64,000 nucleotides of DNA, from positions 186,001 through 250,000 of IMG/VR virus record IMGVR_UViG_3300017917_002374; one strand, 5' to 3'. Under the pieces are notes generated by a model that saw only the letters and a list, made by a program, of their open reading frames with translations, ran no database searches and was not told the origin of the DNA. A program made the position numbers and the translations under genes. Positions 14,801-54,098 of this stretch are shown here, piece after piece (the stretch's first letter is position 1; each line of letters opens with the position of its first letter).

Positions 14801-17800
14801 GTTTGATTTAGCGGTCGCATTGGCTAATATAGTAATTTGAGATGTTCCAATAGTTGACGACATTCTTGCCAACACTGTATTTGCGCCAGTTACTGTCACA
14901 GTAGGAGCAAAAGTATATCCGCTACCTCTGTTGGTAATTTCAAAACTGTCAATCGCCCCATTAGCGAACAGTGTGATGTTGCCCACCGTAGCGTTGATAC
15001 CATTTTCAATTTGATCTGGAGCGTCTATTACTATGGCCACATTAGATTCAAAATAACCTGTTCCTCTTAACGGAGTACCAAGATCAGATAAAAACACTAA
15101 ATTACTTACACCATCAGTACGAGCAAATATACCAGTTATTGCTCGGTTGTTAATATCTTTAGCAACCTTTTCACTGTTGCCATCGCTTTCCTGAAACACC
15201 ACAGGAATATCATTTATTCTGATATAATCGCCCTGTAGAACTGTAATATTGGCATTGTCTCCGACTTCTTTACCAAATACCAATGGCTTATTAACAAACC
15301 GGTATACTTTTCCATTGTAATAATCAACATCTCTATAGCCAGGTGCACCAACAAATATGTTTTTTCTTGATTGGTCTACTGCCACGCTTTGACCAAAATA
15401 ACTGTCTTTGACTATATCAGGATTCTCTATTTTTTGAATCAAACTAAATTGATTTACATCAACTTTTATTTTAGCTCCGCTTCGTGGAGCAGTTGTAAAT
15501 GTAATTGTGGTTTGTTCAGGTAAAACTACATAAGCAGTGGCTATATCTTCTAAATCAACCGGACCACCGCCTGATAAAACCACAGTTGGCACCGATGTAT
15601 ATCCAGAACCTGCATTAGTTACTATCACACCTGTTACTTTGCCTGTGGTAACATCAATACTAGCAGTAGCGGTAGCACCAGTACCGCCGCCTCCTGTAAT
15701 AACCACAGTTGGTGCACTGGTGTAATTTGCCCCACCATTAATAAGCACAATGTTGGAAATTCCAGATTGACCCACGGATCCTACTTCGTAATCAATTCCT
15801 TGAGAGAGTTCAAATCCGTCAATGGTAATTTTTGTAACTCCTGCAATGTCTCTTAAGGTTTTGTAAGTGTTGGTACTTCCTGAAACTGAGCCAACAAACA
15901 CTTGATATTCTCGGTCAAAGATATAGACTTTACCTACTCTAATAATATCAGTGTTATCATCAGTTGCCCCTGCTTCCGGAGCTCCAATTGCAACTTGATA
16001 TCCTTCTTTATCTATTGCCAAAGACCAGCCAAATTTTGCCACTCCTCTTGTGACTTTACGATTTTCAGTTCCTTGCAAAGCAAAAGCGCCGCCTACTAAT
16101 TTTTTATACAGTTGATATGATCCTGAGTTAGCCCCATCAGTGTTTAATACCTTGACGATGTCACCAACTTGATAACTACCAGCAACCATTGCACTATAAG
16201 TATCCACCGTGGCCGCCAATAATTGTCTTGCTACACTGTTAGATTGTACTCCAGCTTCCCACACAATTTGATCAGTTGGCTCAAGTGTGGTAACTAAAAT
16301 ATAATACTTGGTCAAAACATTTACTGCTAAAGTAGCTTCAGTAGCAAAGTCGTTGTTAAGAAAATTTAATGTTACTCCAGTTAGGCTGTAATCAACCCCC
16401 GGAATAAAAATTCTACCACTGGCTCCTACTACATTTATCTGCTCAATTTCCACCGGAGTAGTGGCCAAAACATAGGATGTTTGTAAAATTCCTCTAATTA
16501 CAGTTGGTGTGATAGCAGTTGTAGGATATATCTGCGACAGATATAAAAAGTTTTCATTTTGAATTGTACCAAAATTTCTAAAGGTTAATACGCCTGCTAT
16601 CACAGTATAATCAAAATCTGGTTCGTACAGTTTACCAGAATCCCCTACTACTTTTACTTCTGCGCTGGTTTTGACCAAAACGTAATTAGTAATATAACTG
16701 ATTTGATTGGTTATAACTTCTATTTTTTGTTGATTTGTTGGAGTGGATTTAGCAGCGTATACATAAACTTTGTTTGCTCCTGGAGCACCAACATATAACC
16801 AATTTTCATCATCTGATACAGCCAAAGCGTGTCCAAATCTATTATTACTATCAAGTTCGGCTGGATGTAATACCTGTTGAGAAATCCAATTAGACCCGGT
16901 ACTCTTAGATATTAACACTGCACCTTGTTGATCAAAACTTCCAGGTGCTCCTACATATCCATATCCACTGCCTAATTCTAACGAGAAACCAAATTCCTCC
17001 GCGTCAAGACCAAATGTGATTAGATTTTGAACTTGAGTAAAGCTACCTTCATCTAGCTGGAAAGTTCTTACTGCTCCTGTGGTTTTTACAATTTCTAATT
17101 CGCAGTCAATGCCGTTACCAATAGAATCAGTTATTATCACCGTGGGTTTATTTGTATAACCTTGTCCAAACTCTCTTAATTGCGCAATTGTAACAGATCC
17201 GTTAGTGACATTAATATTACCAGTAGCACCTGCTCCAGTACCCCCGGACACAGTAGAGAACTGTAATCTAGGAAAGCGATAATTTTGTCCTGTTGCTGCT
17301 ACTAGCAGAGTTTCTACACTGCTAGGAGCTAGTTTTACTCTGAGAATCGCTCCATGATTGGTGTTTGTGGTAATAAGATTTATTTCAGGTGGTGATGTAA
17401 ACCCAGTGCCTGGATTTAGAATAGTGCAAGAATTAATAGAACCTGTGCCAGCACCAGTGGTAATCAAGTTAACTATTATTTGTGCTCCAACACCGCCCCC
17501 GCCTACAACTTCTACAACCGGAGGAGTAACGAATCCACTTCCACCATTTATCACTTCTACGCTTGAAATAAATGTAGGGGCTAGTCTTGCCTGCACGTTA
17601 CCACCAGAACCGCGAGAGAAATTTAATGTAGCTTCACTATTAAAATTAATTAATATTGGCCCTGTTTCAACCGTGCCTGTTAAAGTATTGATAGCAGTAA
17701 TTCTTGTATTTTCTGGAATTACATTACCAGTACCATCGTCGCCTGTAACTATGTCATTTAAGAAAACTCTTGAATGTGTAAAAGTAAGAGGTTGTGAATT

Positions 17801-20800
17801 AACAATAGACCATGTGATACTGTCAGTTAATGTGATTGTGTTGCTTGAGTAATTGATACCTGCAACTACTGCTGATGCAACTGTGTTTCCTGTGCCATCA
17901 TTGCCTGTGACAACATCTCCTACCCAAATATCATTAGAGTTTGTTAATACCACACTCTTAGAAGATATCACATTAGCAGATACTGATTTAGTTACACTCA
18001 CACTGAGTGAGGATATAGGAATAGTATTGCTTTGGTAGGTGTTTGACGATGTAGTAGCAACATTAAAATCAACAATCTCAATATTAGGTAACAGATCGTA
18101 ATTGTTTCCTGACGCTGTAAGTCTTGCGGTCAACAGCGTGCCTGATTCAGTATCTAATGTAGCAGTAACATTTTTGCCATTTTCTAGATCAGGGGCGCTA
18201 AATGTTGCTTCTGGAACTTCGTATAAAAATCCAGGATTTATAACTCTAATTCCAGAAACACCACCGTCTGAATAATCTTTGGCACCGCTGATTACCAGTC
18301 GTTGATCATTATTAATAGCAATAGCTTCGCCGTACCCTTGCTGAGACTGAGCTTCACCTTCTCTCAAAGGTAAAATTTTATCAAAAGTCCAACCTGCATT
18401 TTTTTCAAACACAGCCCACAGGTTGTTTCCTATATCATTGTCAATCCAAATCTTGTCTTTGTCTCTCCATCCATGTCTTGGCACAAAATCTACCAGTTGA
18501 TTTATTCTTGAGAATCTTACTGATACCAATGTAAGTAACACGCCAGTACCGTCAACAAATTGTTGTGATCGCAATCTCTGTAAATTTTGATATCCTTCAA
18601 CCACAAATTGATCGTTATTAGTTACTGCTGTTACTTGGTAGAAACCATTGTAATCAATATCAAAGTTTTTTACAACTATAACAGTGCCTGCTACCAAGCC
18701 GTGCGGAACATTGGTGGTAACAGTTATTCTGTTGTCCAGACCAATTTGAAACTGGTTTATCAAAACATCAGTTTCGTTAACTCTATAAACATTCCAATCT
18801 TTGTTGAAGTCTCTGGCTACCCAGATTTTAAATCCGGCGCCTATAATGTTTACTAGATCTGCATAACTGGCATAATCTGTGATATCAAAAATTGTGGCGT
18901 CAACATCATCAAGTCTAGGATACCCAGCGGTTACTGCATCAGATAATCTAGTTTTAACATCCTGTCTTAAAGAAATAATGTTTTTGTCAGTGAGATTATC
19001 TGGTGCATAATACAACTGACTAATTTCCACATTTATCAATCCCTCTTGATCAACATCAGTTTTGTTTTTTAATACCAAAGTTGATGGGTTGTTCTTTAAA
19101 TCTTGTTCAAGCAGTTGAAACTCAACTGCTTGATCGCTGCCCAGAGCACCATAATCTCCTACACGCAGAGCCCATTCTTCATACAATTCAATATTACTAA
19201 AAAGATTATTAAATCGTGCAGTGGTCAGCGCATCAATTGCATTGATAGAACCTTTTTGTTTAATGTATCCTTGATAGAACTTGGTCTGACTCACGTTATC
19301 AAGTTTGAAATCTTGAAAATAAGATCTTTCTCTGAAGCCAGTTATTCCTGAACTTAAACTATCAAGATCAGCATCTGCTACAGTGTCATCAATGTTATAG
19401 ATACTGTTGAACTTTTCAGCGTTGTAAGAAAAGTTTGGCAATAGTCCTGTCTTGATTTTTGCTTTATCAATATTACTCCAGTAAGTAAAATCAAATTCTG
19501 TTGAAGCAGGTACTTCGCTGATTGCAAAATAAAACTTTTCTTTGAAACTAATCAATGCGCTTTTTCTATAATTTCTACCAGGTTGCCATTCATCAATGAT
19601 ATCGTTATTGTAAACAAATCCACCAGGATTCAATTGTCCAGTCCAGTTGTTGGTTTTGTTTCCTATTAGTCGTAAACGGTACTGTCTGTTTCCAAGTTCA
19701 GGTTGGTAGACAATGTCTCCAAACACTGTACTATTATCCATTAATAACACATGTTCGTATTGTACAAGGTTAAAGACTGCTAGTCCAATAGTATGTCCAA
19801 ATACTGAGGTGATTTGAAAAACGTTATCATCCCGTAACACTGAAAACTGACTGTTCTTGATTATGTTAAAGTTCTGATCAAGAATTTTACTTGCGCTTAT
19901 AGAATTAACCACATGGTCAACTACACCAGCAGTGTTGATAATTTTAATGCTGTTAAACACCGGACTCAATACCAACAGATTACCACTGGCCCATCCTTGT
20001 TGACTCCATACAAGGAATTCTTGCGCACTTAGAATCCAGGTTTGTTTTGTTTCTAGATCAGGATTAAAAGTATCAAAAATTAAACCTTGCGCAGTTAGAT
20101 ACCTACCATAACTGATCAGGAAATCTACTACCTGTTGCTTTGTGGCAAATTCAAATCCATAAGGAACTATCACTTTGGTGAATTCAAAATCTCTATAAAC
20201 AATCGCAGTTTCCTCAATAGCATCTATAGAGAATACATTATTATTTCGCTTGCTAGGAATTATTGTAAAATATGGTTGCTCTAGATCGTATCCGCGCACA
20301 GCAAAGCCAGTAGTAGTTCTTTCAATTACCACTGCACTATAGATAATTTTTTCTACAGGAGCGGATTTGTTTAAGAAAATTTTATAGTTTTCTGGAGGTA
20401 AAATTATACTACTTGCATTACTCACAGGAGAACTTTGATCTGCAATCACTGTGAGGAAATTATTGTCGCTGTAGCCAGCCATTTTATAACTGAGCTTTAC
20501 TTCAACGTTTCTCACAAGATTATTAATCTTGGCCGTTCCGTCTATGGCTTTGTTTGTGAACCAATCTCTTACCCAGTTGATGTATCCTGCAGTTAGAGTA
20601 ACTACTCCTGAGTTAAGTCCATCGTCAGGAATTGTAAAATTATCTTTGTTAACTCTTTGTTTGGTATCTGCTAGAACCAACTGATCAATATTACTATCGC
20701 GTAGATATCCAACTGTGTTCATGAGAGACCCAAAGTAAAATGCTGGTCTACTCAGTGCTATGGCTATTTGAAGAGCATACGGATATTCGCTGCTTCTTCT

Positions 20801-23800
20801 CCAGGCAGTTTCAACCGGACCTTGATCCCCAATTGCCCAGCTAGAGCTCAGTCGCGTTGCATCAAAACTCACCGGAGCAAATTTTTCTGGGCTTTTTAGT
20901 TGCCCATATTCGTCAACTGGAATATATGTTGACAGTCCTGGTCTAGCGAATCTAGTATCAATACCTTGTCTTGTGCCTTCTGCAATAAAGCCTAGCTCTA
21001 GATCGTCCCACAGTACAGTATTTGATCCTGTGTACGGTGCCGGGCCATATCTATTTTCCCACCAAGAAGGCTTTTCGTAAAATCCCAGCATTTCCCAAGG
21101 AGCAAGATGAGGTCTATCTGTGTCAAAGAAATAGAAATATATTCCTCTCCAGAAGCCTGGTAAAAATTCGTCATCATTATCTTTTAAGAATTTGTAGTTC
21201 CAGGTCCATGCATTGTTACTTTGAAAAGTATCATTACTAGAGTAATTAACTGAATTAACTCCGACCCAACGCAGAAAATTTCTTGATAACAGTTGGTTAA
21301 ACTCTGCTAGAGAATAATTTATTTTTCTAAATTTACCAGGAATACTATCAATTATGTCAAGTATGGTATTGGTATATCGTACCTTGATATTGTTGTAAAT
21401 TCTTAATTCAAGTTCTAGTAATAAATCGTCTCTATAATCTCCAAATGTTGGCATGATACTACCGTCATGTCCTTGGATAACCTGTCTTGGAGTTTGATAA
21501 CTATCATCAATAAAAATGCTTGGCACATAACTAGGATACAACCCCAACTTACTAGGTGTTTCGGGAACATAACTTCCTACTGTGGTTGGTCTGTCAATTA
21601 ATTCAATGTATGACGTATAGGTCAACGTCACTGTTTCAGACAAGTCAATTGCAGCAATGTTTTGATTAAAAGTAAAATCTTTATTTTTTGCTAGTTGTCT
21701 ATAAGTGCCTGTAGCAGTATCTCCTAAGTATACTAATACACTGCGTCTGCTTGGCACTGTGTCATTGTACAAACTTGGAATTTGATATCTTAGTTGTCTG
21801 ATATCAACTATAGGAATTCTGCTGTTTGTAAAGGCTTTGCCATAAGGAACCATGTCGCTATCATACCAAGGCATGGTAGTATTTTTTCCTAGATTCACAA
21901 CTTCCATTATTTTATCAACTGCTTCAGGAATGTTACCAACGTTTATTTCAACTTTTAGAGATTGATCCAAAAATTTATTTTTAAACTTGGTGTACTCTTT
22001 TTGAGCGTATTCAATGGCTTCAATAAATTCAAAGCCTTGATCACCAAATGCCAGTCCACTGTACAATGCTGGCGAAGCATGTTGTAAAATACAGCCAGTC
22101 CAATCTTTAATTTCAAGATCTCTAAGATTATTTTTGGCTAAAATATTTCCAGACAACCCATAATTATTTTGACTCATTGCAATTAGATGCTGTCTTAACT
22201 GACCTAGAGTCAATGTATTAAAGTTTTTATTTTCGGTGTTTAAATCAATGTTTAACGGCAGTTGATAGTAGCCTAGCTCCGAAACACTAGAACTATAAAT
22301 TAAAATATCAACTTTACTAGGCGGATCAAAACTTAATTCATCTTGATTAATTACTACCACATCCAGCTGTTCATATTTGGTAACTGTGTACAAAGACTCA
22401 GCTAATAGTCTATTGTCAACATAAACTTTCAAATAAGGAATAGTTTCGCTGGCATTAGGATTAATATCTATCTGAAAATAATTTGTATTGCCATCAAAAA
22501 ATTTTGTAATAATCTGATACTGTTTGGTTTTTTCTGCCGTTTTTGTCCAAATGTTTCTATATACAAATCCACTGTCTGTTTTTTGTTTGAATAAAAATTG
22601 ATTTAATGGCAACGATGTAGATAGTTTGTTTTTAATAAAAGAAAAACTATCAGTGTCGTAGTTGTTTGCAAAAACGATATCTCCAACATTTTGGAAATTT
22701 TTATAACTTAATGCAAATCCTAGTTCTGCATCTCTCTGACCAGTTCCTTCTAGATAAGAAAATATCTTTGTTCCTTCAAATTTAGATCCAAGAAATGCAG
22801 TGGTGTCTGAAATAGAAGATCCGTCGTCATCAAACAGATCAAACAAAGGTGCTTGATTGTAAGATGTTTTTTGCTGTGCAGGGATCCATTCTTCTCCGGT
22901 ATACCAATACTGGTTATAAGTATTCACACCAGTTTGTCTTTGTTTTATTGCATTTTGTCCTGTAGTTGGCAGTGCCACAATAACTGTATCGTCACTTTCA
23001 TAAGTGTCAGGAGTAATGTCGTCAGTATTAATTACTCTTGATCGTGCATCTGTTATAAAAGCTATGGCCTTAGTAGCATAATTAAATGTCACAAGAAGCC
23101 CAGCAAACTCTGGTTGAGCATGATTTAATATTACATAATATTCAAATTCAGCAGCGCCAATTTGAATAGTGTCTACTCCAATCACTTTTGGTACAATTGA
23201 GCCAGTAGTTACACCGTTACCGGATGCATTGTACTCGCTGGTTACTGTCATTCCAACAATAATACCGTCTAGGTCAGATACTAATAGTCGGGCTGTACCA
23301 ACACTGGATGCTACCTTTGTTACTGCGGGCACAGCCGGCTCAACTGTTATTAGAGGAGCTGAAGTGTATTCTGCACCAACATTGTCAACAGAAATTGTTT
23401 GAATTTTACTTGGATTGAGATTAGTAGTTGCTGTGGTTGCAGTTGATATCTGTAATGCCAAACCTGCTGCTGCATTTATTCTTCTGTTTAATGTGATTTC
23501 ATTACTTACAGCATTTACAGTTTCAATTAACAATCCGTTACCAAGCGAGTCTGCAAGGTCGTTTACCAACATGCCTTTCTGTAGTCCTGTAACATCTTCA
23601 AGCACAATTGAAAAGGTATTGTTCACCGGTTGTTTAATAAAATAATTGCTTTTGAAGTCTCCAACAGGATTATTATCGCCAAAGAATCCTTCAACAAAAA
23701 ATCTATTTTTGGCTGTAATAAAGATTTTTGTACCTGCTGGTAGGTCAATTGATTCACCGTCAGAATCTAAACTGTCAATAGTACCATTAAGAGTGATTTC

Positions 23801-26800
23801 GTACTGAGTTTCAAAATTGCTATCAAGAACTTCTTGTACTCCTGCTACTTTGAGAATATTGGCCTGTGTTAATGCCACATCCATATAGTATTGATACAAA
23901 TTAGAATTTGGTCCAGTGGTGTCTGTACTTACATAAGGAACTCTTGAAAAATCTCTGTAGCTAACATTTTCGTTTTCCTCAACTACTAGAAAAACTAGCC
24001 AGTCTTCTTTAACATACGTGGCTTCGGGGACATTAGTCACAATCAATTTGTTACTTTGATATGTTGTTACAGATGCTGTGATTAACTCAACACTGGTAAT
24101 AACCTCAGTGGTTAGATCTTTGTTGAGTTGATATCCAGATCCAGCCGAAACTACCTTAAAATATTCAAGCACATTATCATTAAGCACCACTTCAGCGGTG
24201 GCTGCCAAAACACCCGAAGGAGAAATAGTAATAGATGGAATGGAAGTATAGCCTGCACCAGGATCAGTCACAGCTATTGCATAAACTTCGCTACTGTCTG
24301 TATAAACTGCGGCTTGAGCTTGTCTTCCTACAAATGACACTATAGTACCAACTTTTACACTCACTGGTCTTGATAGCAGAATACGATTTTCGTCTAACAA
24401 CTGTACAACTTTTATCTCTGGCTCAATTGTAAATGCGGCTGCTACTCCTCCAGTAATGTATGCAGTGTAATTTCTGCCATCTAATGTGACAGAACGTGCT
24501 TCATCTGCGTACAAGCGAAGGGTGAAAGGATCAATAACTTCAACCCAATAGGTGTTGTTATTCATCTCAACTGTGCCCAGTACACCTCTGATAGTGATCT
24601 CGTCACCATCAATTAAATTGTGAGCATCTGCAGTAGTAAGAACTACAGGATTATCAATTTCAATATTTGCAATATCAAGTGGAATTGAACCACCAGTAAT
24701 GTACATGTCAATTCCGGCCACATTACTGTTGTCAACTGTGATGGTCGTGCTGTTTCTAGATGTAGAGACTACAGTTGCAGTTTGCACCCCAGGTGGTTTA
24801 AAAATAAAATTACGATTGTTTTGAACTTGTACTAGGTCTGATACTTTTACAACCAGATTACCAAAAATATCTTCAATAGTGGCGTTCACAGGTACACCAT
24901 CGCCATACATTCTATAGCCAGTAGCAAGTCCTGTGACAGAGTTCAAAGATACCAATTGAGTGCTAAAAACTGCGCTGTTTCCATACACAGCTTTAAGAGT
25001 CACTGCTGTTGCTTCGGCTGCTTTAAAAACCAACTGTACATCGTTTGACAGTGATGCCGGACTAGAAATTAAAATTGAACTTCCGCCTAGCACATTATTA
25101 ATCACTGTACCTCCAGTGATCCCGCTGCCGTAGATCAGCTGTCCGGCTTCTAGACCAGTGGTGTTATTGAGCACAATGATATTGCTCGTAAAAGTAGCAG
25201 TGTTTCCGTAGACTGTTAATTTTTCTAAGCTATTAGGGCTGCTAATGTTAGCTGTGGCCATGGTCCCAATACCAGAACCGCCATTGGTAATACGCACATA
25301 GTCAACATGTTTGTACGTAGAATATACAGGATCAATACGGGCATCTTGTGTGTTGGGAGTATCAATCTTGACAAACGGGTCTGCAACAAAATTTAATCCT
25401 CTGTAGTTAACCGTGACATTAGCTACGCTAGTAGACTCCATTATTACTGTGCCTGTAGCTTGTACTGCACCTATGCTGGGAACTGGTCTAGAGAAAGTTA
25501 CTGCGGGTACAAAATCGTACAAAGGCGCTACCGAATAATCTACTCCTCTAGAAACAATTTCGTAATTGCTTATAGATCCGTTTTCAATAGTAACCGTGAT
25601 TTCTGCCCCGGTTCCTGCACCACCACCAACAAATCCAACTTCTGGGGTGCTTCTATAGTTAATTCCAACATTACTAAAAACTAAATCTTGTATTTCTCCA
25701 GTCACAGGATCCACAATAAGAGTAGCTGCGGCAGGAAAATCTGGATTTCCGCCTATAAAAGTAACTGTGGTATCTTCTATTATTTGAGTAGAAGATACTG
25801 TGTACGTAGGCAATAATTCAGTACTCTCGCTGACTAAATGAATCTGTGTTCTATCCGCAATAGAAATAAATTCTACTTTAAAAATTTTGTTTCTGACTTC
25901 AGGATTCTTGTCAGCAGCAAAAATTATTCTTGTTCCGTCAGTTAAAGGACGTGATACATTATTAGGCAAAGTAATCACATAGGTCTCTTTACCTTCAACT
26001 TCTTTGAATGCATCTGTAATTGTGTAATCTAAAACGTCAACTGGTGCTTTGGCTCGTTGTCCATAATTGAATAGATACAAGTCTGATTCAAATTCAATAA
26101 TTGGACGTATTGCTCTTATTGGAGTCTCAAGCAACAAATTTGGATTGTCATTATATTGTGCTGCCAACTCAATTAATTCACTATGAAACCAACGGTTGCT
26201 TCTGCTCCAGGCATTTAGATCTCTACTTCCTCTTGACACAGTAATATAATCAGGAGTAGTTAGATTGTCATTCAATGCATATTCCTCTGGTACTGTAAGA
26301 TTGCCAGTTCCAACCAGTCGTATGCTTTTGCCAACACCTTCAACAATATAAACACTGTCTGCGTATTCGCTAGGAAATGCAGTATTATCAAATCGTATTT
26401 TTAATCCATTGGTAAATCTTACACCATTTGGACTTGTATAATTTTTTCTACCAAGAATCACCCCTTCAACATCTAGACGTGCATCAGTAGGTTCAATAAG
26501 TTTAATAACACCACCATAACTGTCGCTATTTGCATCTTGATAGTATAGTTCGGTAAGAGGCGATGTAATTTGCTTTACTCTTTCCCAATAGCCTTCTGCA
26601 TTTTTTATAAATTCAACTCCGGCATTATTAGTACCGCCGCTGATATAAACTTTTTCGTTAATGTTTACAGACTGTAGATGTTCTAGCTGTACTAGTCCAT
26701 TATTAGTGCCTATGTTTGTTATTCTAATACGAAAAATATCGTATCTTTTTGATAATGGCAATAGATCACCTTGTTCGTATCCGCTTTCAACAAAAGGTGC

Positions 26801-27760
26801 TCCTTGGTCGTACTTGTCAAAATCAAAAGTGCCTTTGTCTGTCCAATCAGTATCGTTTTCTGATCTTGAAAGGAATATTAAGGTTGATCCATCTAATGAT
26901 CTAGCAGTAGCACCATCAATGCCGCCTGACTGTCTAATTATTGTAAGCAGATGATTTTGAACTCTAGAGTATGATAAATCCGTAGCATAATTTACTGTGG
27001 CTATTCTTGATGCGAATCGTTCGGCATCCTGTGCATTTGATGCTGGAACGGAAAATACAACTACACCGTTGTCTTCACCATTGTTTTCAACTCCAAAAAC
27101 TTCTCTTGACAAAGCTTCGGCTTCGGTTGATCTAGTACCAGTTTTTCCTGGCTCGGTTTGAATCCAAAAACCATTGCCTGGTTGGTTTACTGTGAATCTA
27201 TAGGTATTGCCTTTGACCAGAGTTAAAACTGGATTAGGATCTCTGCCATCACTAGAAAGTGTATAAGCTGTTTGTTTTGAATCACGAGCTACGGAAAAAT
27301 TTAATACTTCCGTAATGGCACTGGCACTTACTGCCACTTCTGGTGGTCCGTCAGGCAACCAATAATATTGATTAAAGTTAACAAACTTATCAAAGTCAAA
27401 CAGACCATTGAAATTGTAACTTTCGTTTTCAAAAAGTCTGCTGTGGTCATTGGTTAGACCACCGTAGTAATTAATTTTTTGAATTAAATCAATGTAGCTG
27501 GAATAGAATTCTACATTTTTGTTTTGATCCTGTACTACGAAACTGGCCTCAAGTTGATAATTCTGTCTGTCTTGTGTGGGTTCTTCTATGTACGAATCAT
27601 TATACTTAAAAGTTGGAGCAAATTTACGTCCTACAAATCCGTCAATTTTTTTTAAGTCAGGTTCTGAAATCAACTGATCAACAGTTGCAGCCAAAAACTT
27701 TTTGTTGGTGTCGGATCTAAATATTTCTGGTAGTAAATTAATACTTTTAATTGAGGCCAT
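8894..27760 (-). CDS. Giant (6,288 aa) baseplate wedge-associated protein, positionally gp7-like
   Basis: Uninterrupted 18.9-kb ORF directly after gp25 and gp6; GGGGTGATATA / GSGYTxxPTV modules; seven FG-type propeller blades; late promoter upstream. The gp7 assignment is by synteny only. Confidence 0.7.
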
Positions 27761-41989: not shown

Positions 41990-42032
41990 TAAAATTTAAT
42001 CATGGCACCGCTGGAGATAATTATGTTTGCAA

Positions 42033-42467
42033 ATGACGTGGACCTATCAAGGAAATATTGTAGAAGAACTACCAGACAACTGTGTGGGGTTTGTCTATGA
42101 AATTGTTAACCTTGCCACTGGACGCAAGTACATTGGTAAAAAACTGGCAAAATTTGCACGAACTTCTTATCGAACAGTCAAATTAAAAAATGGCACAAAA
42201 AAACGCAAACGTGTTAAAAGCAAAATACCTTCAGACTGGCTCACCTATTACGGCTCCAATGATATTCTAAACGAAGATGTACAACAACTAGGCGCTGATA
42301 AATTCACCAGAGAAATACTCTATTATTGTTATTCCAAGGCAGAATGTAGTTATATTGAAGCAAGAGAACAGTTTACAAGACGGGTTCTTGAATCAGATGA
42401 CTACTATAACGGACACATACAAGTCCGTGTACATGGCTCACACATCAAAGGCAAATTAAGTAGTTAG
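42033..42467 (+). CDS. GIY-YIG family nuclease
   Basis: GFVYEIVNLATGRKYIGKK…YYGS…FTREIL…E; ATG 42033 preferred over the track's TTG 42027. Confidence 0.8.
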   Translation: MTWTYQGNIVEELPDNCVGFVYEIVNLATGRKYIGKKLAKFARTSYRTVKLKNGTKKRKRVKSKIPSDWLTYYGSNDILNEDVQQLGADKFTREILYYCYSKAECSYIEAREQFTRRVLESDDYYNGHIQVRVHGSHIKGKLSS

Positions 42468-42840
42468 GCTCGCACAGGCCAATCACGTGTGCCCTACACC
42501 TGGATCTAGGATCGCAGGGATGGAAGTCTTGCCGCTACAGCAAGCACTCAATCACTACCCTTCGGGATGAAGATGGCAAATTGCCGCCATTTGATTGTTT
42601 GAACAGGATTCATAAAGGCTAAAAAGACGCTCTAGCGATAGAGCACGTTTGTTAGGTGTGCTGATATACATTTAACAAACCGCCGTTGTAATAAAGACTG
42701 CGCTCGAGGTACCGGACAACCGCCTCTGTAATGCGTTAATATCAGTGACTGTGCTACTCAGATGATGTACAGCTTTGCCCGCCCTGGGCAAAGAGTGACC
42801 AATTAATCTAGATGATATACGTTCGCGCTTCGCGCATGAA
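42465..42840 (+). ncRNA. Candidate large structured non-coding RNA (family not recognised)
   Basis: ORF-free gap filled with stems: GCTCTA-GCGA-TAGAGC, CC-TTCG-GG, a 14-bp stem 42647-42680 whose loop CTGATA complements TATCAG 42740-42745, CTTTGCCC/GGGCAAAG, and others. Confidence 0.65.
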
Positions 42841-51944: not shown

Positions 51945-51971
51945 TAACCCTAAACAGGAGAAGGAAATAAA

Positions 51972-53165
51972 ATGACAAGCGCACTACTAGAAAGCCGTTG
52001 GGGCGAAACCAAAGAAGCCCTGTTAGAAGGCTTAAACGGTTCTAAAAGAACCACAATGGGTGTAATCCTTGAGAACACTCGCAAGTATCTGGCAGAAAGT
52101 GCAACAGCAGGAGCAACTGCTGCCAGCAACGTAGCAACATTAAACCGTGTGATTCTTCCAGTGATTCGCCGTGTGATGCCAACAGTTATCGCTAACGAGA
52201 TTGTTGGTGTTCAGCCAATGACTGGTCCAGTCGCACAAATCCACACACTACGTGTACGTTATGCTGATAGCCAAGCTTCTGGTTCTGGCGATCTAGCAAC
52301 AGGTACCACAGCAGGTGAAGAGGCTCTAAGCCCATTCAAGATTGCTGTTGGCTATTCTGGTGCTACCAGCACAGCAAACACAGGCGGTCGTCCAAGCAGC
52401 ACTTCTACATTAGAAGGTGTTGCAGGTAATCGTATCAACGTGCAAATCATGAAGCAAGTTGTTGAAGCCAAGTCACGCAAGCTGTCAGCTCGCTGGACAT
52501 TTGAAGCTGCTCAAGATGCACAAGCCATGCATGGTTTGGACATTGAAGCAGAAATCATGGCAGCTCTTGCTCAAGAGATCACTGTTGAGATTGACCAAGA
52601 AATTCTGGGCTCACTGCGTAGCCTAGCAGCAACCGAAGAAACTTTTGACCAGAGCACCGTTTCTGGTACAGCTACTTTCGTTGGTGACGAGCATGCTGCA
52701 CTGGCAGTTCTAATCAACCGTGTTGCAAACAAGATTGCAAGCCGCACACGTCGTGGTGCTGGTAACTGGGCAGTTGTTAGCCCAGCTACACTCACAGTAC
52801 TACAGAGTGCAACAACCTCCGCTTTTGCACGTACCACAGAAGGTACCTTTGAAGCACCAACTAACACCAAGTTTGTTGGTACACTGAATGGCGCAATGCG
52901 TGTGTATGTGGACAGCTATGCTGGTGACAGCCAGGCTGTGTTGGTTGGCTACAAGGGTAGCAGCGAGGCAGATGCAGCAGCATTCTACTGCCCATATGTT
53001 CCTCTAATGAGTTCTGGTGTTGTGCTGGATCCATCAACATTTGAACCAGTCGTGGGCTTTATGACACGTTATGGTTATGTTGAATTGACCAACACTGCTT
53101 CTTCTCTAGGTAACGCAGCAGATTACCTGGGCGAGATCAGCGTAAGCAACCTCAGCTTCCAATAA
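51972..53165 (+). CDS. gp23: Major capsid protein gp23
   Basis: EIVGVQPMTGP, KSRKLSARWTFEAAQD, ALAQEITVEIDQEI, FYCPYVPL and FMTRYG; candidate LAE|S maturation site. Confidence 0.96.
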   Translation: MTSALLESRWGETKEALLEGLNGSKRTTMGVILENTRKYLAESATAGATAASNVATLNRVILPVIRRVMPTVIANEIVGVQPMTGPVAQIHTLRVRYADSQASGSGDLATGTTAGEEALSPFKIAVGYSGATSTANTGGRPSSTSTLEGVAGNRINVQIMKQVVEAKSRKLSARWTFEAAQDAQAMHGLDIEAEIMAALAQEITVEIDQEILGSLRSLAATEETFDQSTVSGTATFVGDEHAALAVLINRVANKIASRTRRGAGNWAVVSPATLTVLQSATTSAFARTTEGTFEAPTNTKFVGTLNGAMRVYVDSYAGDSQAVLVGYKGSSEADAAAFYCPYVPLMSSGVVLDPSTFEPVVGFMTRYGYVELTNTASSLGNAADYLGEISVSNLSFQ

Positions 53166-53188
53166 TTCCACTCGGGATGGGAAACATT

Positions 53189-53211
53189 AAACCGCCGCAA
53201 GGCGGTTTTTT
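53189..53211 (+). terminator. Intrinsic terminator after gp23
   Basis: AAACCGCC-GCAA-GGCGGTTT followed by TTT. Confidence 0.9.
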
Positions 53212-53218
53212 GTTGGTC

Positions 53219-53246
53219 AAAAAAATACCTGGGTTGCCCCAGGTAT
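53219..53246 (-). terminator. Minus-strand intrinsic terminator
   Basis: On the minus strand, ATACCTGGG-GCAA-CCCAGGTAT followed by TTTTTT. Confidence 0.8.
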
Positions 53247-53283
53247 CTTAAAAACTAAACAGGATGCTGTCTGACTAGCATCA
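53219..53283 (-). ncRNA. Candidate ~65-nt small RNA (or leaderless 8-aa micro-ORF MLVRQHPV, 53255-53281)
   Basis: Bounded by a TTGCTT-17-TATAAT promoter and a terminator; has a 5' hairpin GATGCT/AGCATC and a U-rich linker. Confidence 0.5.
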
Positions 53284-53289
53284 AGTGTT

Positions 53290-53318
53290 ATTATATAGTC
53301 TCAGTTGGTTTAAAGCAA
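53290..53318 (-). promoter_or_regulatory. Sigma70-like promoter TTGCTT-17-TATAAT
   Basis: aagcaa 53313-53318 and attata 53290-53295 on + strand; perfect -10; same -35 as the gp55 promoter. Confidence 0.65.
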
Positions 53319-53326
53319 ACTTTATG

Positions 53327-53333
53327 ATAAATA
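53327..53333 (+). promoter_or_regulatory. Late promoter ATAAATA
   Basis: Precedes a structured ~80-nt leader and ATG 53421. Confidence 0.6.
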
Positions 53334-53420
53334 ATTTTGTTCTAATCATTTGAGCCTCATTAGAGGACTTTGCGGCACCCACCGCGAGGCCTAGAACGCC
53401 ATTACAAGGAGATAAAACAA

Positions 53421-54098
53421 ATGGGACGTCCAATTAGTAAAAAATATATTAATCCACTGGGTGTAGGACCTGGTGGCGAAGGTGTAACAATCACATCTGG
53501 TAATGCAGTTGCAACATTCAGTGATGTTGGTAGCGGATACTATGCAGCCAACGTAAGCGCAACTGTCAGCGCACCACAATTAACAAACGGTACAACTGCA
53601 ACCATTGGTACAGTTTATTTGTTTGCCAATGGTGCGATCAAGGCACTTGGTGTTTCAAACGCCGGCTCTGGCTATACCGCAGCACCAACTGTGACATTCT
53701 TTGGTGCAAACAGTGGGCCAGCTGCTGCTACAGTGGCAATTGATGCGGCTACTACCAGTGCTAATGCTATTCTAGCCAACTGCTTCTTTACCACAGGCAG
53801 TGTGGGAGTGTTAACAGCAGACATCTTAAAAGCACGTGGTGCTCGTACTTTTGTGTGCAAAACTGGTTCAACAGTTGAAACATTAAAACTGATCACCAGT
53901 CCAAACGCCAATCCATACGCAGGCGGACAAATGACTATCACAGCTACATTTGCTGATGCTAGTACATTTAACGTGGCTAAAATCACAAACCGTAAGGTTT
54001 ACAGCTCAACTGGACAAAGCTACAAGTGGACATTAACCACTGGCGCAGCGGCCAATGTATCAGCTACTGATATCACTGTGGTTGTTTCTAGTCTGTAA
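53421..54098 (+). CDS. Virion structural protein (MGRP… start; possible head decoration)
   Basis: AAGGAG RBS before ATG 53421 (track's TTG 53370 rejected); contains GSGYTAAPTVTF module; has its own promoter and terminator. Confidence 0.6.
   Translation: MGRPISKKYINPLGVGPGGEGVTITSGNAVATFSDVGSGYYAANVSATVSAPQLTNGTTATIGTVYLFANGAIKALGVSNAGSGYTAAPTVTFFGANSGPAAATVAIDAATTSANAILANCFFTTGSVGVLTADILKARGARTFVCKTGSTVETLKLITSPNANPYAGGQMTITATFADASTFNVAKITNRKVYSSTGQSYKWTLTTGAAANVSATDITVVVSSL

What the first reader, a model, noticed from the sequence alone, without database searches (positions are those of the whole stretch)
53219..53318. Self-contained antisense mini transcription unit after the major capsid gene
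On the minus strand, a near-consensus promoter (TTGCTT-17-TATAAT) is followed about 65 nt later by a GCAA-loop terminator with a U-tail, with no normal gene between. The predicted RNA is GAUGCU-AGUCAGAC-AGCAUC hairpin, then CUGUUUAGUUUUUAAG single strand, then terminator, the architecture of a bacterial trans-acting sRNA. It also begins with a leaderless 8-codon ORF (MLVRQHPV). It may be an early phage sRNA, a protein-decoy RNA or a micropeptide. Alternatively it is an empty insertion site for accessory early genes.
Basis: partly seen in the sequence, partly recalled or inferred. Interest (0 to 1): 0.65.

Follow-up and report, generated by a model that had tools for sequence, protein, structure and literature searches.

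The report
Phage small RNA targeting capsid mRNA
A 355-kb freshwater jumbo phage carries, just behind its major capsid gene and on the opposite strand, a tiny conserved gene for a ~64-nt RNA whose invariant unpaired stretch matches the ribosome-binding region of the capsid mRNA, so the phage probably tunes its own capsid production with a small RNA.

Summary
On the minus strand, TTGCTT-17-TATAAT (53318-53290) is followed by a 5' hairpin, a single-stranded linker and a GNRA-capped terminator with seven U (to 53219). A single sequence would not exceed chance, but about 18 related jumbo-phage contigs carry the same unit at the same site. The hexamers and their 17-nt spacing are conserved while all 17 spacer positions vary. 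Both stems show compensatory changes. There are 18 G-U pairs and no A-C pairs, which fits only the minus strand. The hairpin loop UCAGAC and the linker core CUGUUUAGU never change. The 8-codon ORF is not conserved, so I reject the micropeptide. No Rfam family matches.

New finding: the invariant seed UCCUGUUUAG is perfectly complementary to CUAAACAGGA at -22..-13 of the capsid gene's start codon (51950-51959). All 18 assessable unit-bearing contigs have this site. Only 1 of 80 unit-lacking relatives does, though phylogenetically independent contrasts number only 1-3.

In four relatives a methyltransferase gene follows the terminator. The unit therefore also resembles the leader of an optional accessory ("moron") gene that this genome lacks.

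Expression is untested, because the metatranscriptome contigs were uninformative.

Verdict: a new phage small-RNA family, probably regulating capsid translation.

The parts
53313..53318 (-). -35 hexamer TTGCTT of the unit's sigma-70-type promoter
   Evidence: Read. TTG is invariant. The hexamer is TTGCTT in 15 of 19 catalogued units; the exceptions are TTGCGT (L124), TTGATT (L181) and TTGTGT (L331, L338).
53296..53312 (-). 17-nt promoter spacer: fixed length, hypervariable sequence
   Evidence: All 17 columns vary among homologues and the length is always 17.
53290..53295 (-). -10 hexamer TATAAT
   Evidence: No variable column in any homologue.
53219..53282 (-). Predicted ~64-nt small RNA. The TSS is inferred 7-8 nt after the -10 and the 3' end at the U-tract.
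   Evidence: Fold of -25.1 kcal/mol, z = -4.8. Covariance models R1/R2 find homologues at 21-99 bits. It is single-copy in the 355-kb genome.
53263..53282 (-). 5'-terminal hairpin: 6-bp stem and 8-nt loop AGUCAGAC, with UCAGAC invariant
   Evidence: Pair counts. Compensatory flips occur in L124 and in groups B and C.
53255..53264 (-). Invariant seed 5'-UCCUGUUUAG-3'. Eight nt are unpaired and two close the 5' hairpin. It is fully unpaired in group B.
   Evidence: The linker core has 0 of 9 variable columns. It is complementary to 51950-51959.
53246..53254 (-). Variable distal linker (U-rich here)
   Evidence: A 4-nt indel and substitutions are seen among close relatives.
53226..53245 (-). Terminator hairpin T2: 8-bp stem and a GCAA (GNRA) loop
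   Evidence: Seven of 8 pairs show double changes. Loops are GCAA, GCGA or GAAA in most homologues. G-U pairs fit only this strand.
53219..53225 (-). U7 tract of T2
   Evidence: U6-U9 in all homologues.
53189..53212 (+). T1, the terminator of the capsid gene. It is flanked by A-runs and T-runs on both strands, so it can act in both directions. It lies tail-to-tail with T2.
   Evidence: Listed and conserved in relatives. In relatives the methyltransferase gene ends 6-8 nt from it.
51950..51959 (+). Predicted target CUAAACAGGA in the capsid mRNA, at -22..-13 of the start codon, covering an AGGA(G) Shine-Dalgarno-like motif
   Evidence: It is one of only two copies of this 10-mer in the window. 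The duplex is -14.5 kcal/mol. It is present in all assessable unit-bearing loci and in 1 of 80 unit-lacking loci. The site lies in an unstructured region.
51972..53165 (+). Major capsid protein gene (T4 gp23-like)
   Evidence: phrog_138, E = 1e-101. 66-70% identity to the capsid proteins of phages Phosso, Vibrio 2.275.O and PA5oct.
53353..53423 (+). freshwater-2-like 5' leader of the next late gene, divergent from the unit's promoter
   Evidence: RF02980 at 34.6 bits, below the 49.9 gathering score. The homologous leaders in 12 of 20 relatives score 52-74 bits.
53421..54098 (+). Next late gene (starts MGRP..., a fast-evolving structural-module protein)

Best explanation
This is a genuine, selectively maintained small-RNA gene of an uncultivated freshwater jumbo phage (355 kb, T4-like capsid).

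A host-type (sigma-70) promoter drives a ~64-nt RNA made of three parts: a 5'-terminal stem-loop, an unpaired conserved seed, and a strong GNRA-capped intrinsic terminator. This is the build of an Hfq-type base-pairing sRNA.

Most likely the seed UCCUGUUUAG pairs with CUAAACAGGA at -22..-13 of the major capsid mRNA, the gene lying tail-to-tail next to it. The duplex would lie at the upstream edge of the region a 30S ribosomal subunit usually contacts. Capsid translation would then be held down until late capsid mRNA outnumbers the sRNA, giving a threshold or timer. Stabilisation or activation of the mRNA is not excluded.

The unit is accessory, and in four relatives it also serves as promoter and leader for an optional methyltransferase gene placed after the terminator.

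Shown here: the sequence features, their conservation and covariation, the strand, and the seed-target complementarity together with its co-occurrence with the unit.

Inferred: transcription, the RNA ends, early timing, pairing in vivo, and the direction of regulation.
For: Homologues of the unit occur in about 18 contigs from different metagenomes, always between the capsid gene and the next late gene and always on the minus strand.

Promoter: the -10 has 0 of 6 variable columns, the -35 has 1 of 6, and the spacer has 17 of 17 at constant length.

Structure: 98.6% of cells are paired, 9 of 14 pairs show changes on both sides, and the slid controls give 28-43%.

Strand: 18 G-U cells and no A-C cells. 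Terminator loops are GCAA, GCGA or GAAA.

The genome uses sigma-70-like promoters widely: 49 TTGNNN-N16-18-TATAAT sites, clustered in presumptive early regions. This unit has the only such site between genes in the late block.

Selection persists without the methyltransferase. Within the clade of the window's closest relatives, none of which has the methyltransferase, 10 of 17 spacer columns differ. The hexamers, loop, seed and stems are intact apart from one A-to-G change that gives a G-U pair.

Seed and target: the match is a perfect 10-mer with a duplex of -14.5 kcal/mol at -22..-13 in all 12 loci tested. The target region is unstructured. The site is present in 18 of 18 assessable unit-bearing contigs and in 1 of 80 unit-lacking ones. 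Within the 28-row capsid clade the figures are 12 of 12 against 1 of 16, and the close unit-lacking sister lineages have drifted to UAAUUAGG, UAAAUAGG or UAAAAGG.
Against: There is no expression evidence. Four metatranscriptomes, available only as contigs, cover the capsid gene but not 53211-53351. Such libraries and assemblies cannot show a 64-nt RNA.

The co-occurrence of unit and target rests on only 1 (well-supported branches) to 3 (all branches) phylogenetically independent contrasts, so a sign test cannot reach significance. The two features lie 1.3 kb apart and may simply be co-inherited.

A 10-mer complement somewhere in 64 kb is not rare. About nine other 10-mers of the RNA have chance complements.

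Seed and target are both invariant, so there is no compensatory seed-target covariation. L001 has the target but no unit. The variant here called group C (L331, L338) has a seed one U shorter, which gives a bulged duplex of -12.7 kcal/mol.

Two seed nucleotides close the 5' hairpin in this genome. The conserved loop UCAGAC has no explained partner. The host is unknown, so host targets were not examined.
Confidence: 0.5

Rival explanations
1. Orphaned leader of a lost accessory gene. The unit would be only the promoter plus terminator-containing 5' leader (attenuator) of the optional methyltransferase gene. In this genome the gene has been deleted and the remnant has no function of its own.
For: In L084, L104, L140 and L183 a 230-242-aa Methyltransf_11 gene starts 11-17 nt after the U-tract and ends at T1. 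Those proteins are 65-89% identical, so the gene is old at this site. It is never found without the unit in the loci held. Its presence toggles between sister tips of the tree, which implies repeated loss.
Against: Eleven or more distinct methyltransferase-less units keep perfect hexamers, paired stems, loop and seed, while neutral positions (spacer, distal linker, terminator loop) are scrambled. This holds even within a wholly methyltransferase-less clade. The terminator stems vary freely while everything upstream is fixed, so there is no conserved anti-terminator pairing. A 45%-identical methyltransferase in another phage has no such leader. A decaying scar would not keep a 10-mer matching the capsid TIR.
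Confidence: 0.17
2. A real sRNA with a different job. It would act on host mRNAs or sequester a protein (Hfq, ProQ or another) through the conserved loop UCAGAC and the linker. The match to the capsid TIR would be a coincidence or a hitch-hiking linked polymorphism.
For: The architecture is that of a typical Hfq-binding module: a U-rich linker and a terminator with U7-8. The invariant loop has no partner in the phage genome. Independent contrasts for the target association are few. Chance 10-mer complements are common.
Against: The complementary site is exactly the invariant seed. It lies in the TIR of the adjacent, most highly expressed late gene. It is invariant in unit-bearers but drifts in close unit-lacking relatives. 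The RNA core is absent from one representative genome each of 185,579 bacterial and archaeal species, so there is no sign of host origin or mimicry.
Confidence: 0.2
3. A cis-antisense element or insulator. The RNA, or the act of transcribing it, would work on plus-strand transcripts that read through the capsid terminator into the next late gene, through a 64-bp duplex and RNase III cleavage. Alternatively its promoter, back to back with the downstream gene's promoter region, would compete with it.
For: The only full-length complement in the genome is the plus strand of the locus itself. The unit's -35 lies 8 nt from a conserved TAAATA box that precedes the freshwater-2 leader. The terminators are arranged tail to tail.
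Against: The RNA overlaps no ORF and stops before T1. Relatives without the unit place the same leader directly after T1 and manage without it. Strong conservation of a short seed and a loop, together with free variation of the rest of the sequence, is not what full-length antisense pairing predicts.
Confidence: 0.08
4. A processive antitermination site (nut- or put-like). The hairpin plus the conserved linker, which loosely resembles boxA, would make RNA polymerase read through T2 to express the methyltransferase or antisense capsid RNA.
For: This rests only on a resemblance recalled from memory. The order is hairpin, then a conserved single-stranded U-rich box (CUGUUUAG against boxA CUCUUUA), then a terminator, then a gene without a Shine-Dalgarno sequence.
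Against: The box differs from boxA at a core position. No N-like or Q-like factor was identified. Most genomes have nothing to read into except T1. This was not tested.
Confidence: 0.03
5. A micropeptide gene (MLVRQHPV), or a chance assembly of promoter-like and terminator-like motifs in AT-rich spacer DNA.
For: The ORF exists. Promoter-like motifs alone are not enriched here.
Against: In group B the frame across the conserved nucleotides is shifted and the ORF runs through the terminator. In L124 the stem-compensating changes give L-to-H and Q-to-L. The AUG is buried in the stem. Chance cannot explain conservation and covariation in about 18 contigs.
Confidence: 0.02

Closest known systems
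Phage P1/P7 c4 antisense RNA (represses ant/icd by pairing with short sequences at the ribosome-binding region of a target in the same locus)
   Same: It is a small phage-encoded RNA of about 70 nt. It acts through short complementary boxes on the translation-initiation region of a neighbouring phage gene that is not encoded opposite to it.
   Different: c4 is processed out of the same transcript as its target and controls immunity functions. This RNA has its own promoter and terminator, lies on the opposite strand downstream of its putative target, and the target is the major capsid gene. There is no sequence homology. This comparison is from my own knowledge, not from a tool.
Phage lambda OOP RNA and P22 Sar RNA
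   Same: Both are self-contained 70-80-nt units with a sigma-70 promoter and an intrinsic terminator, transcribed against the flow of neighbouring phage genes.
   Different: OOP and Sar overlap their targets and are fully complementary cis-antisense RNAs. This RNA overlaps no gene and stops before the capsid terminator. Its proposed target is a 10-nt site 1.3 kb away.
Hfq-dependent base-pairing sRNAs of (pro)phage origin, such as DicF of the Qin prophage
   Same: They share a 5' structured end, a conserved unpaired seed, a terminator with a long U-tail, and a seed that masks a ribosome-binding region.
   Different: No Rfam family matches. The best hit in the unit is 21 bits against a 54-bit threshold. 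The host and Hfq dependence are unknown. The proposed target is the phage's own structural gene, not a host gene.
Morons of lambdoid phages (accessory genes with their own promoter and terminator inserted between late genes)
   Same: The unit has a patchy distribution among close relatives. It is an autonomous promoter-terminator unit wedged between two late genes. Other cargo occupies the same site in other relatives: a TPR-like protein, a tRNA, and homing-endonuclease-like ORFs.
   Different: Here the conserved product is an RNA. The protein cargo (the methyltransferase) is optional and lies downstream of the terminator.
Host sRNAs acting on phage capsid or coat mRNAs: ArcZ with T2 gene 23 (bioRxiv 10.64898/2026.06.19.733364) and CisR with CTXphi cep (PMC13250501)
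   Same: In both, an sRNA pairs with the mRNA of a major capsid or coat protein. T2 gene 23 encodes T2's major capsid protein, and the capsid here is T4-like too.
   Different: Those sRNAs are host-encoded. This one is phage-encoded and sits next to its putative target. I read only passages or the abstract of those papers.

Membership tests
Any Rfam family (release 15) | Covariance-model score at or above the family's gathering threshold | tested here: not met
   Nothing in 53219-53318 reaches threshold. The best hits are STnc370 at 21.4 bits (needs 54), EF3314_EF3315 at 20.9 bits, RNAI at 16.4 bits and CopA at 17.2 bits.
Sigma-70-type promoter | -10 TATAAT, -35 TTGACA-like, 16-18-nt spacing, with hexamers conserved and spacer free | tested here: met
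   The -10 is perfect and invariant. The -35 is TTGCTT, a 3-of-6 match, with TTG invariant. The spacing is 17 in all homologues and all 17 spacer columns vary. Activity was not measured.
Intrinsic (Rho-independent) terminator | A G+C-rich stem, a short loop, and a run of at least 6 U directly after the stem, on the transcribed strand | tested here: met
   The stem has 8 bp (5 G-C), the loop is GCAA and the tail is U7. It is kept in all homologues through compensatory changes.
Trans-acting base-pairing sRNA (Hfq type) | Own promoter and terminator, and a conserved unpaired seed | tested here: met
Trans-acting base-pairing sRNA (Hfq type) | Seed complementary to a conserved site in a target mRNA, usually at the ribosome-binding region | tested here: met
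   There is a 10-bp perfect match at -22..-13 of the capsid gene, present in 18 of 18 unit-bearing loci. The significance is limited by shared ancestry.
Trans-acting base-pairing sRNA (Hfq type) | The RNA is expressed, binds the chaperone, and regulates the target | not testable with these tools
   The metatranscriptome contigs are uninformative, and the host is unknown.
Cis-antisense RNA (lambda OOP / P22 Sar type) | The transcript overlaps the target gene on the opposite strand | tested here: not met
   The RNA spans 53282-53219 and the capsid ORF ends at 53165, with T1 in between. There is no ORF opposite.
Riboswitch or attenuator leader | A downstream regulated gene, and a conserved alternative (anti-terminator) pairing | tested here: not met
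   There is no gene after T2 in this genome or in most relatives. The terminator stems vary while the upstream sequence is fixed, so no conserved competing helix is possible. No known riboswitch model matches.
Moron (autonomous accessory unit in a late operon) | Own promoter and terminator, inserted between late genes, present in some close relatives and absent in others | tested here: met
   It is a 107-nt insertion relative to L008. At least 3 gains or losses are needed on the capsid tree. The protein cargo is present in only 4 relatives.
Micropeptide gene | The reading frame and the peptide are conserved | tested here: not met
   The frame is shifted in group B, there are radical substitutions in L124, and the start codon is buried in the stem.
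freshwater-2 RNA (RF02980), for the neighbouring leader and not for the unit | Score at or above 49.9 bits | tested here: inconclusive
   The window copy scores 34.6 bits. The homologous leaders of 12 of 20 relatives score 52.4-73.5 bits.

The most novel reading that the evidence does not exclude
A lytic jumbo phage encodes its own trans-acting small RNA, made by host RNA polymerase, that base-pairs with the ribosome-binding region of the phage's major capsid mRNA. This would add an RNA-based threshold or timer to capsid production. The same module doubles as a self-terminating leader for an exchangeable accessory gene. That would make it the first phage-encoded sRNA known to control a major capsid gene, and a new sRNA family confined to uncultivated freshwater jumbo phages.
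Probability: 0.4. Interest if true: 0.75.

Novelty: new member of a known kind. Interest (0 to 1): 0.62.

Why it matters
Few small RNAs of lytic phages, and almost none of jumbo phages, have a known target. Here comparative data give three things: a well-defined new RNA family, a precise and testable target site (10 nt in the capsid gene's translation-initiation region), and natural controls (relatives lacking the RNA have mutated sites).

If confirmed, it would show that phages use their own sRNAs to regulate structural-gene translation. That would complement recent reports of host sRNAs pairing with capsid or coat mRNAs.

It also illustrates how the spot behind the capsid terminator serves as a landing pad for early-expressed accessory units: an sRNA, a methyltransferase, a TPR-like protein, a tRNA and homing-endonuclease-like ORFs.

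Tried and rejected
- **Rfam.** No family matches the unit.
- **Closest cultured phages.** Megablast against cultured phages found nothing. By protein, the nearest are Phosso, Vibrio 2.275.O and PA5oct at 66-70%. PA5oct has a homing endonuclease behind its capsid gene and Phosso has an unrelated ORF. Model R2 finds no unit in either locus.
- **Expression.** One run search and one read-laying run were used. Four metatranscriptomes, held as contigs only, cover the capsid gene up to about 53171. They show nothing at 53211-53351 and a little at 53356-53452. This cannot reveal a 64-nt RNA, its strand or its ends, so it counts neither for nor against.
- **Other copies.** There is no second copy in the 355-kb genome. 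None was found in the 80 capsid-anchored loci.
- **Bacterial genomes.** The core of the RNA is absent from one representative genome each of 185,579 bacterial and archaeal species.
- **Pairing with the freshwater-2 leader.** The duplex energies equal those of shuffles, so this is rejected.
- **Targets for the loop UCAGAC.** There is no conserved complement near the capsid operon or elsewhere.
- **T4-type late promoter.** The ATAAATA box next to the unit is not enriched genome-wide (48 and 10 occurrences per strand against about 56 expected). The idea is left open.
- **Methyltransferase.** It has no homologue in this genome. A 45%-identical homologue in another phage lies inside an operon without the leader.
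- **Formal co-evolution test.** There are too few independent contrasts.
- **Not attempted.** Genome-wide accessibility-aware target prediction and host target prediction were not done, because the host is unknown.
Full report
**Setting.** The window is bases 186001-250000 of a 354,959-bp virus record with direct terminal repeats, that is, a complete jumbo phage. Genes from about 38.3 kb to the end of the window run on the plus strand and form a structural module: prohead protease, major capsid protein (MCP) at 51972-53165 (phrog_138, E = 1e-101), and fibre-like proteins. The MCP is T4-like. The nearest cultured relatives are Sinorhizobium phage Phosso, Vibrio phage 2.275.O and Pseudomonas phage PA5oct, at 66-70% identity. 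The finding lies in the 255-nt gap between the MCP gene and the next late gene, whose ATG is at 53421.

**Observation.** The minus strand reads as follows:
- TTGCTT (53318-53313), a 17-nt spacer and TATAAT (53295-53290);
- 7 nt, then a 6-bp hairpin with loop AGUCAGAC (53282-53263);
- a 17-nt unpaired linker;
- an 8-bp hairpin with a GCAA loop (53245-53226);
- seven U (53225-53219).

The 64-nt RNA folds exactly so, at -25.1 kcal/mol with z = -4.8. The consensus scan listed neither promoter nor terminator. The -35 matches TTGACA at only 3 of 6 positions, and the scan's greedy stem extension uses up the U-tract. Promoter-like hits in the region are not enriched over shuffles (18 against 12.5 +/- 4). 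The single sequence is therefore suggestive only. Directly upstream on the plus strand lies the MCP gene's own terminator T1 (53189-53212), so T1 and T2 stand tail to tail.

**Relatives without the unit.** Eighty capsid-anchored loci from IMG/VR (78-90% MCP identity) all lack it. What they share with the window is T1, preceded by a GGGATGGGAA box, and the 5' leader of the next gene. In L008 these two conserved parts are about 11 nt apart, so the unit is a 107-nt insertion (53219-53325) relative to that arrangement. The leader belongs to Rfam freshwater-2. The window copy scores only 34.6 bits, but 12 of 20 relatives score 52-74 bits. Other relatives carry different cargo at this site:
- a minus-strand TPR-like gene of about 382 aa with its own TTGAC(A/T) promoter;
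- plus-strand homing-endonuclease-like ORFs;
- in one lineage a minus-strand tRNA.

**Relatives with the unit.** Pattern scans, a scan anchored on the fast-evolving downstream protein, and covariance models found the unit in about 18 contigs from different samples. In every case it lies between the MCP gene and the next late gene, on the minus strand. I distinguish three sequence variants of the unit and call them groups A, B and C. The window belongs to group A. Group B is L084, L087, L088, L118, L135 and L160. Group C is L331 and L338.

Promoter:
- The -10 is TATAAT in all copies.
- The -35 keeps TTG everywhere. It is TTGCTT in most copies and once each TTGCGT, TTGATT and TTGTGT, the last being the group C form shared by both its loci.
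- The spacing is always 17.
- All 17 spacer columns vary. Ten already differ within the window's own close clade.

This is the classical footprint of a working promoter.

RNA structure:
- On a model-fitted alignment 98.6% of cells are paired, and 9 of 14 pairs show changes on both sides. Slid controls give 28-43%. The alignment leans towards the structure.
- The terminator stems are almost completely rewritten between lineages.
- There are 18 G-U cells and no A-C cells, so the folded strand is the minus strand. In group B the plus strand loses the first hairpin altogether.
- Most terminator loops are GNRA (GCAA, GCGA or GAAA).
- Two stretches never change: UCAGAC in the first loop and CUGUUUAGU in the linker.

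The unit is single-copy in the genome and matches no Rfam family.

**The small ORF.** MLVRQHPV is not conserved. In group B the frame across the conserved nucleotides is shifted and runs through the terminator. In L124 the compensating stem changes would give L-to-H and Q-to-L. The AUG sits inside the stem. I reject the micropeptide.

**The optional cargo.** In L084, L104, L140 and L183 a 230-242-aa class I SAM-dependent methyltransferase gene (Pfam Methyltransf_11) starts 11-17 nt after the U-tract. It has no Shine-Dalgarno sequence and ends 6-8 nt from T1, which would then serve both strands. The four proteins are 65-89% identical, and the gene is never seen without the unit in the loci held. 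On the MCP tree the unit-bearers fall into three places within one 28-row clade. Each methyltransferase-bearing tip is sister to a tip without the gene. The ancestral module was therefore probably promoter, RNA, T2, methyltransferase and T1, with the gene lost repeatedly.

This makes 'orphaned leader' a serious rival. Three points count against it:
- The units without the methyltransferase show no decay at all, while neutral positions are scrambled.
- No conserved anti-terminator helix is possible.
- A 45%-identical methyltransferase elsewhere has no such leader.

**A target.** A search for the complement of the invariant linker in three larger unit-bearing contigs found, besides the locus itself, a second hit about 1.3 kb upstream in each. 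In the window this is CUAAACAGGA at 51950-51959, positions -22..-13 of the MCP start codon. It covers an AGGA(G) motif just upstream of the likely Shine-Dalgarno sequence AAGGA.
- The 10-mer occurs only twice in the window. The two copies are the unit itself and this site.
- The duplex with the seed UCCUGUUUAG is -14.5 kcal/mol in all 12 loci where both parts could be read. Three extra pairs form in some of them.
- The target region is unstructured.
- All 18 assessable unit-bearing contigs have the site. Of the 80 unit-lacking loci only L001 does.
- Within the 28-row clade the figures are 12 of 12 against 1 of 16. The short-branched unit-lacking sister clade of the window's group has already drifted to UAAAUAGG or UAAUUAGG.
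- Group C (L331, L338) keeps the loop but has one U fewer in the seed, plus an extra C that pairs with the next G of the target. Its duplex is -12.7 kcal/mol.

**Cautions on the target.**
- About nine other 10-mers of the RNA have chance complements somewhere in 64 kb. The argument rests on the seed being the invariant part, on the position in the TIR of the adjacent gene, and on the co-occurrence.
- The co-occurrence amounts to only 1-3 phylogenetically independent contrasts. All are concordant, which is too few for a sign test.
- Unit and site are physically linked.
- In the window two seed nucleotides close the first hairpin.

**Timing and mechanism (inferred).** The genome has 49 TTGNNN-N16-18-TATAAT sites, mostly TTGAC(C/A), clustered on one strand in regions outside the structural block. 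They include a promoter repeated five times. The phage therefore relies on host sigma-70 polymerase for part of its programme, presumably the early part. This unit is the only such site between genes in the late module.

A 5'-terminal hairpin and a strong terminator predict a stable RNA. My best reading is that the RNA accumulates early. It would then mask the upstream edge of the ribosome-binding region of the capsid mRNA, so that capsid protein is made only once late mRNA exceeds the sRNA pool. Stabilisation of the mRNA is also possible. A recent preprint reports that the host sRNA ArcZ interacts with several T2 phage transcripts, including that of gene 23, the capsid gene, and it attributes ArcZ's benefit to protecting specific T2 transcripts from RNase E.

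**Expression data.** Public runs holding this phage are freshwater, pond and soil metagenomes. Six metatranscriptomes hold 11-19% of the sampled words. Four were laid on 52600-54000. Their contigs cover the MCP gene to about 53171, with nothing at 53211-53351 and a little at 53356-53452. Contigs from standard libraries cannot show a 64-nt RNA, so this neither supports nor refutes.

**Comparison with known systems.**
- In function the unit is closest to phage P1/P7 c4 RNA, which pairs through short boxes with the ribosome-binding region of a nearby phage gene, and to Hfq-type sRNAs such as DicF.
- In layout it is closest to lambda OOP and P22 Sar. It fails their defining feature, overlap with the target.
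- In its evolution it behaves like a moron.

It is not a member of any curated RNA family. Library searches found no report of a phage-encoded sRNA that controls a major capsid gene.

**Verdict.** I put the probability that this is a real, selected RNA gene at about 0.8. A specific and testable target hypothesis is new here, and I put it at about 0.5, including uncertainty about the direction of regulation. I classify the finding as a new member of a known kind.

Noticed in passing
window 53353-53423 (+), and homologous leaders in L008, L019, L027, L053, L063, L075, L076, L090 and others: The 5' leader of the gene after the capsid gene belongs to Rfam freshwater-2 (RF02980), a motif known only from metagenomes. 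The window copy scores 34.6 bits and 12 of 20 relatives score 52-74 bits. It always ends in AAGGAG...ATGGGACGTCC (protein start MGRP). freshwater-2 is therefore a late-gene leader of jumbo phages.
   Followed up: partly
window 42467-42600 (+): There is a strong match to Polynucleobacter-1 RNA (RF01718, 119 bits, E = 2e-25) right after the ORF at 42027-42467. The motif was described from Burkholderiales and fresh water or estuary (PMC2864571). Here it sits in a jumbo phage, which may hint at the host group.
   Followed up: no
window 53173-53186 (+), and the same place in most of L001-L080: A box CTCGGGATGGGAA (core GGGATGGGAA) lies between the capsid stop codon and terminator T1. It is conserved even in distant relatives whose surrounding sequence differs. 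Its function is unknown.
   Followed up: no
window 53326-53333 (+), and the same place in all relatives: A conserved (G/A)ATAAATA or GGTAAATA box lies 8 nt from the unit's -35 and just upstream of the freshwater-2 leader. It resembles the T4 late promoter TATAAATA. The motif is not enriched genome-wide, so its role is open.
   Followed up: partly
window 53296-53312 (-), compared with L082, L083 and L086: The promoter spacer differs at up to 9-10 of 17 positions between phages whose flanking intergenic DNA is otherwise almost identical. That is far more than nearby sequence. It could be recombination between variants or diversifying change. It is unexplained.
   Followed up: no
window 8894-27760 (-): A single open reading frame of 6,288 codons, followed by further large minus-strand ORFs of 1,170 and 948 aa.
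   Followed up: no
G000 genome coordinates 41405, 41699, 59577, 59878 and 101671 (outside the window): There are five near-identical strong promoters, TTGACCAAAAA(T/G)A(C/T)CC(A/G)TTT...TATAAT, all on the plus strand. They are part of 49 sigma-70-like sites clustered in presumptive early regions.
   Followed up: no
L076, L063, L053, L075, L065 (between the capsid terminator and the freshwater-2 leader); L090-L092; L053, L075, L067; PA5oct locus L200: The site behind the capsid terminator is a hotspot for accessory units. These include a minus-strand TPR-like gene of about 382 aa with its own TTGAC(A/T) promoter, a minus-strand tRNA with a TTGACT-16-TACAAT promoter, and plus-strand homing-endonuclease-like ORFs. 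PA5oct has an annotated Hef-like homing endonuclease there.
   Followed up: partly
L086 compared with the window (capsid gene and next gene): L086 has a capsid protein 100% identical to the window's, but the next gene is only 68% identical. This marks a sharp recombination breakpoint near the start of that gene.
   Followed up: no
L335:9111-9130, also L328 and L337: The same 20-nt sequence as the capsid TIR (CCCTAAACAGGAGAAGGAAA) precedes an unrelated 144-aa glycine-rich membrane-type protein on contigs with no capsid homologue in the stretch held. It could be convergence or a transferred TIR.
   Followed up: partly
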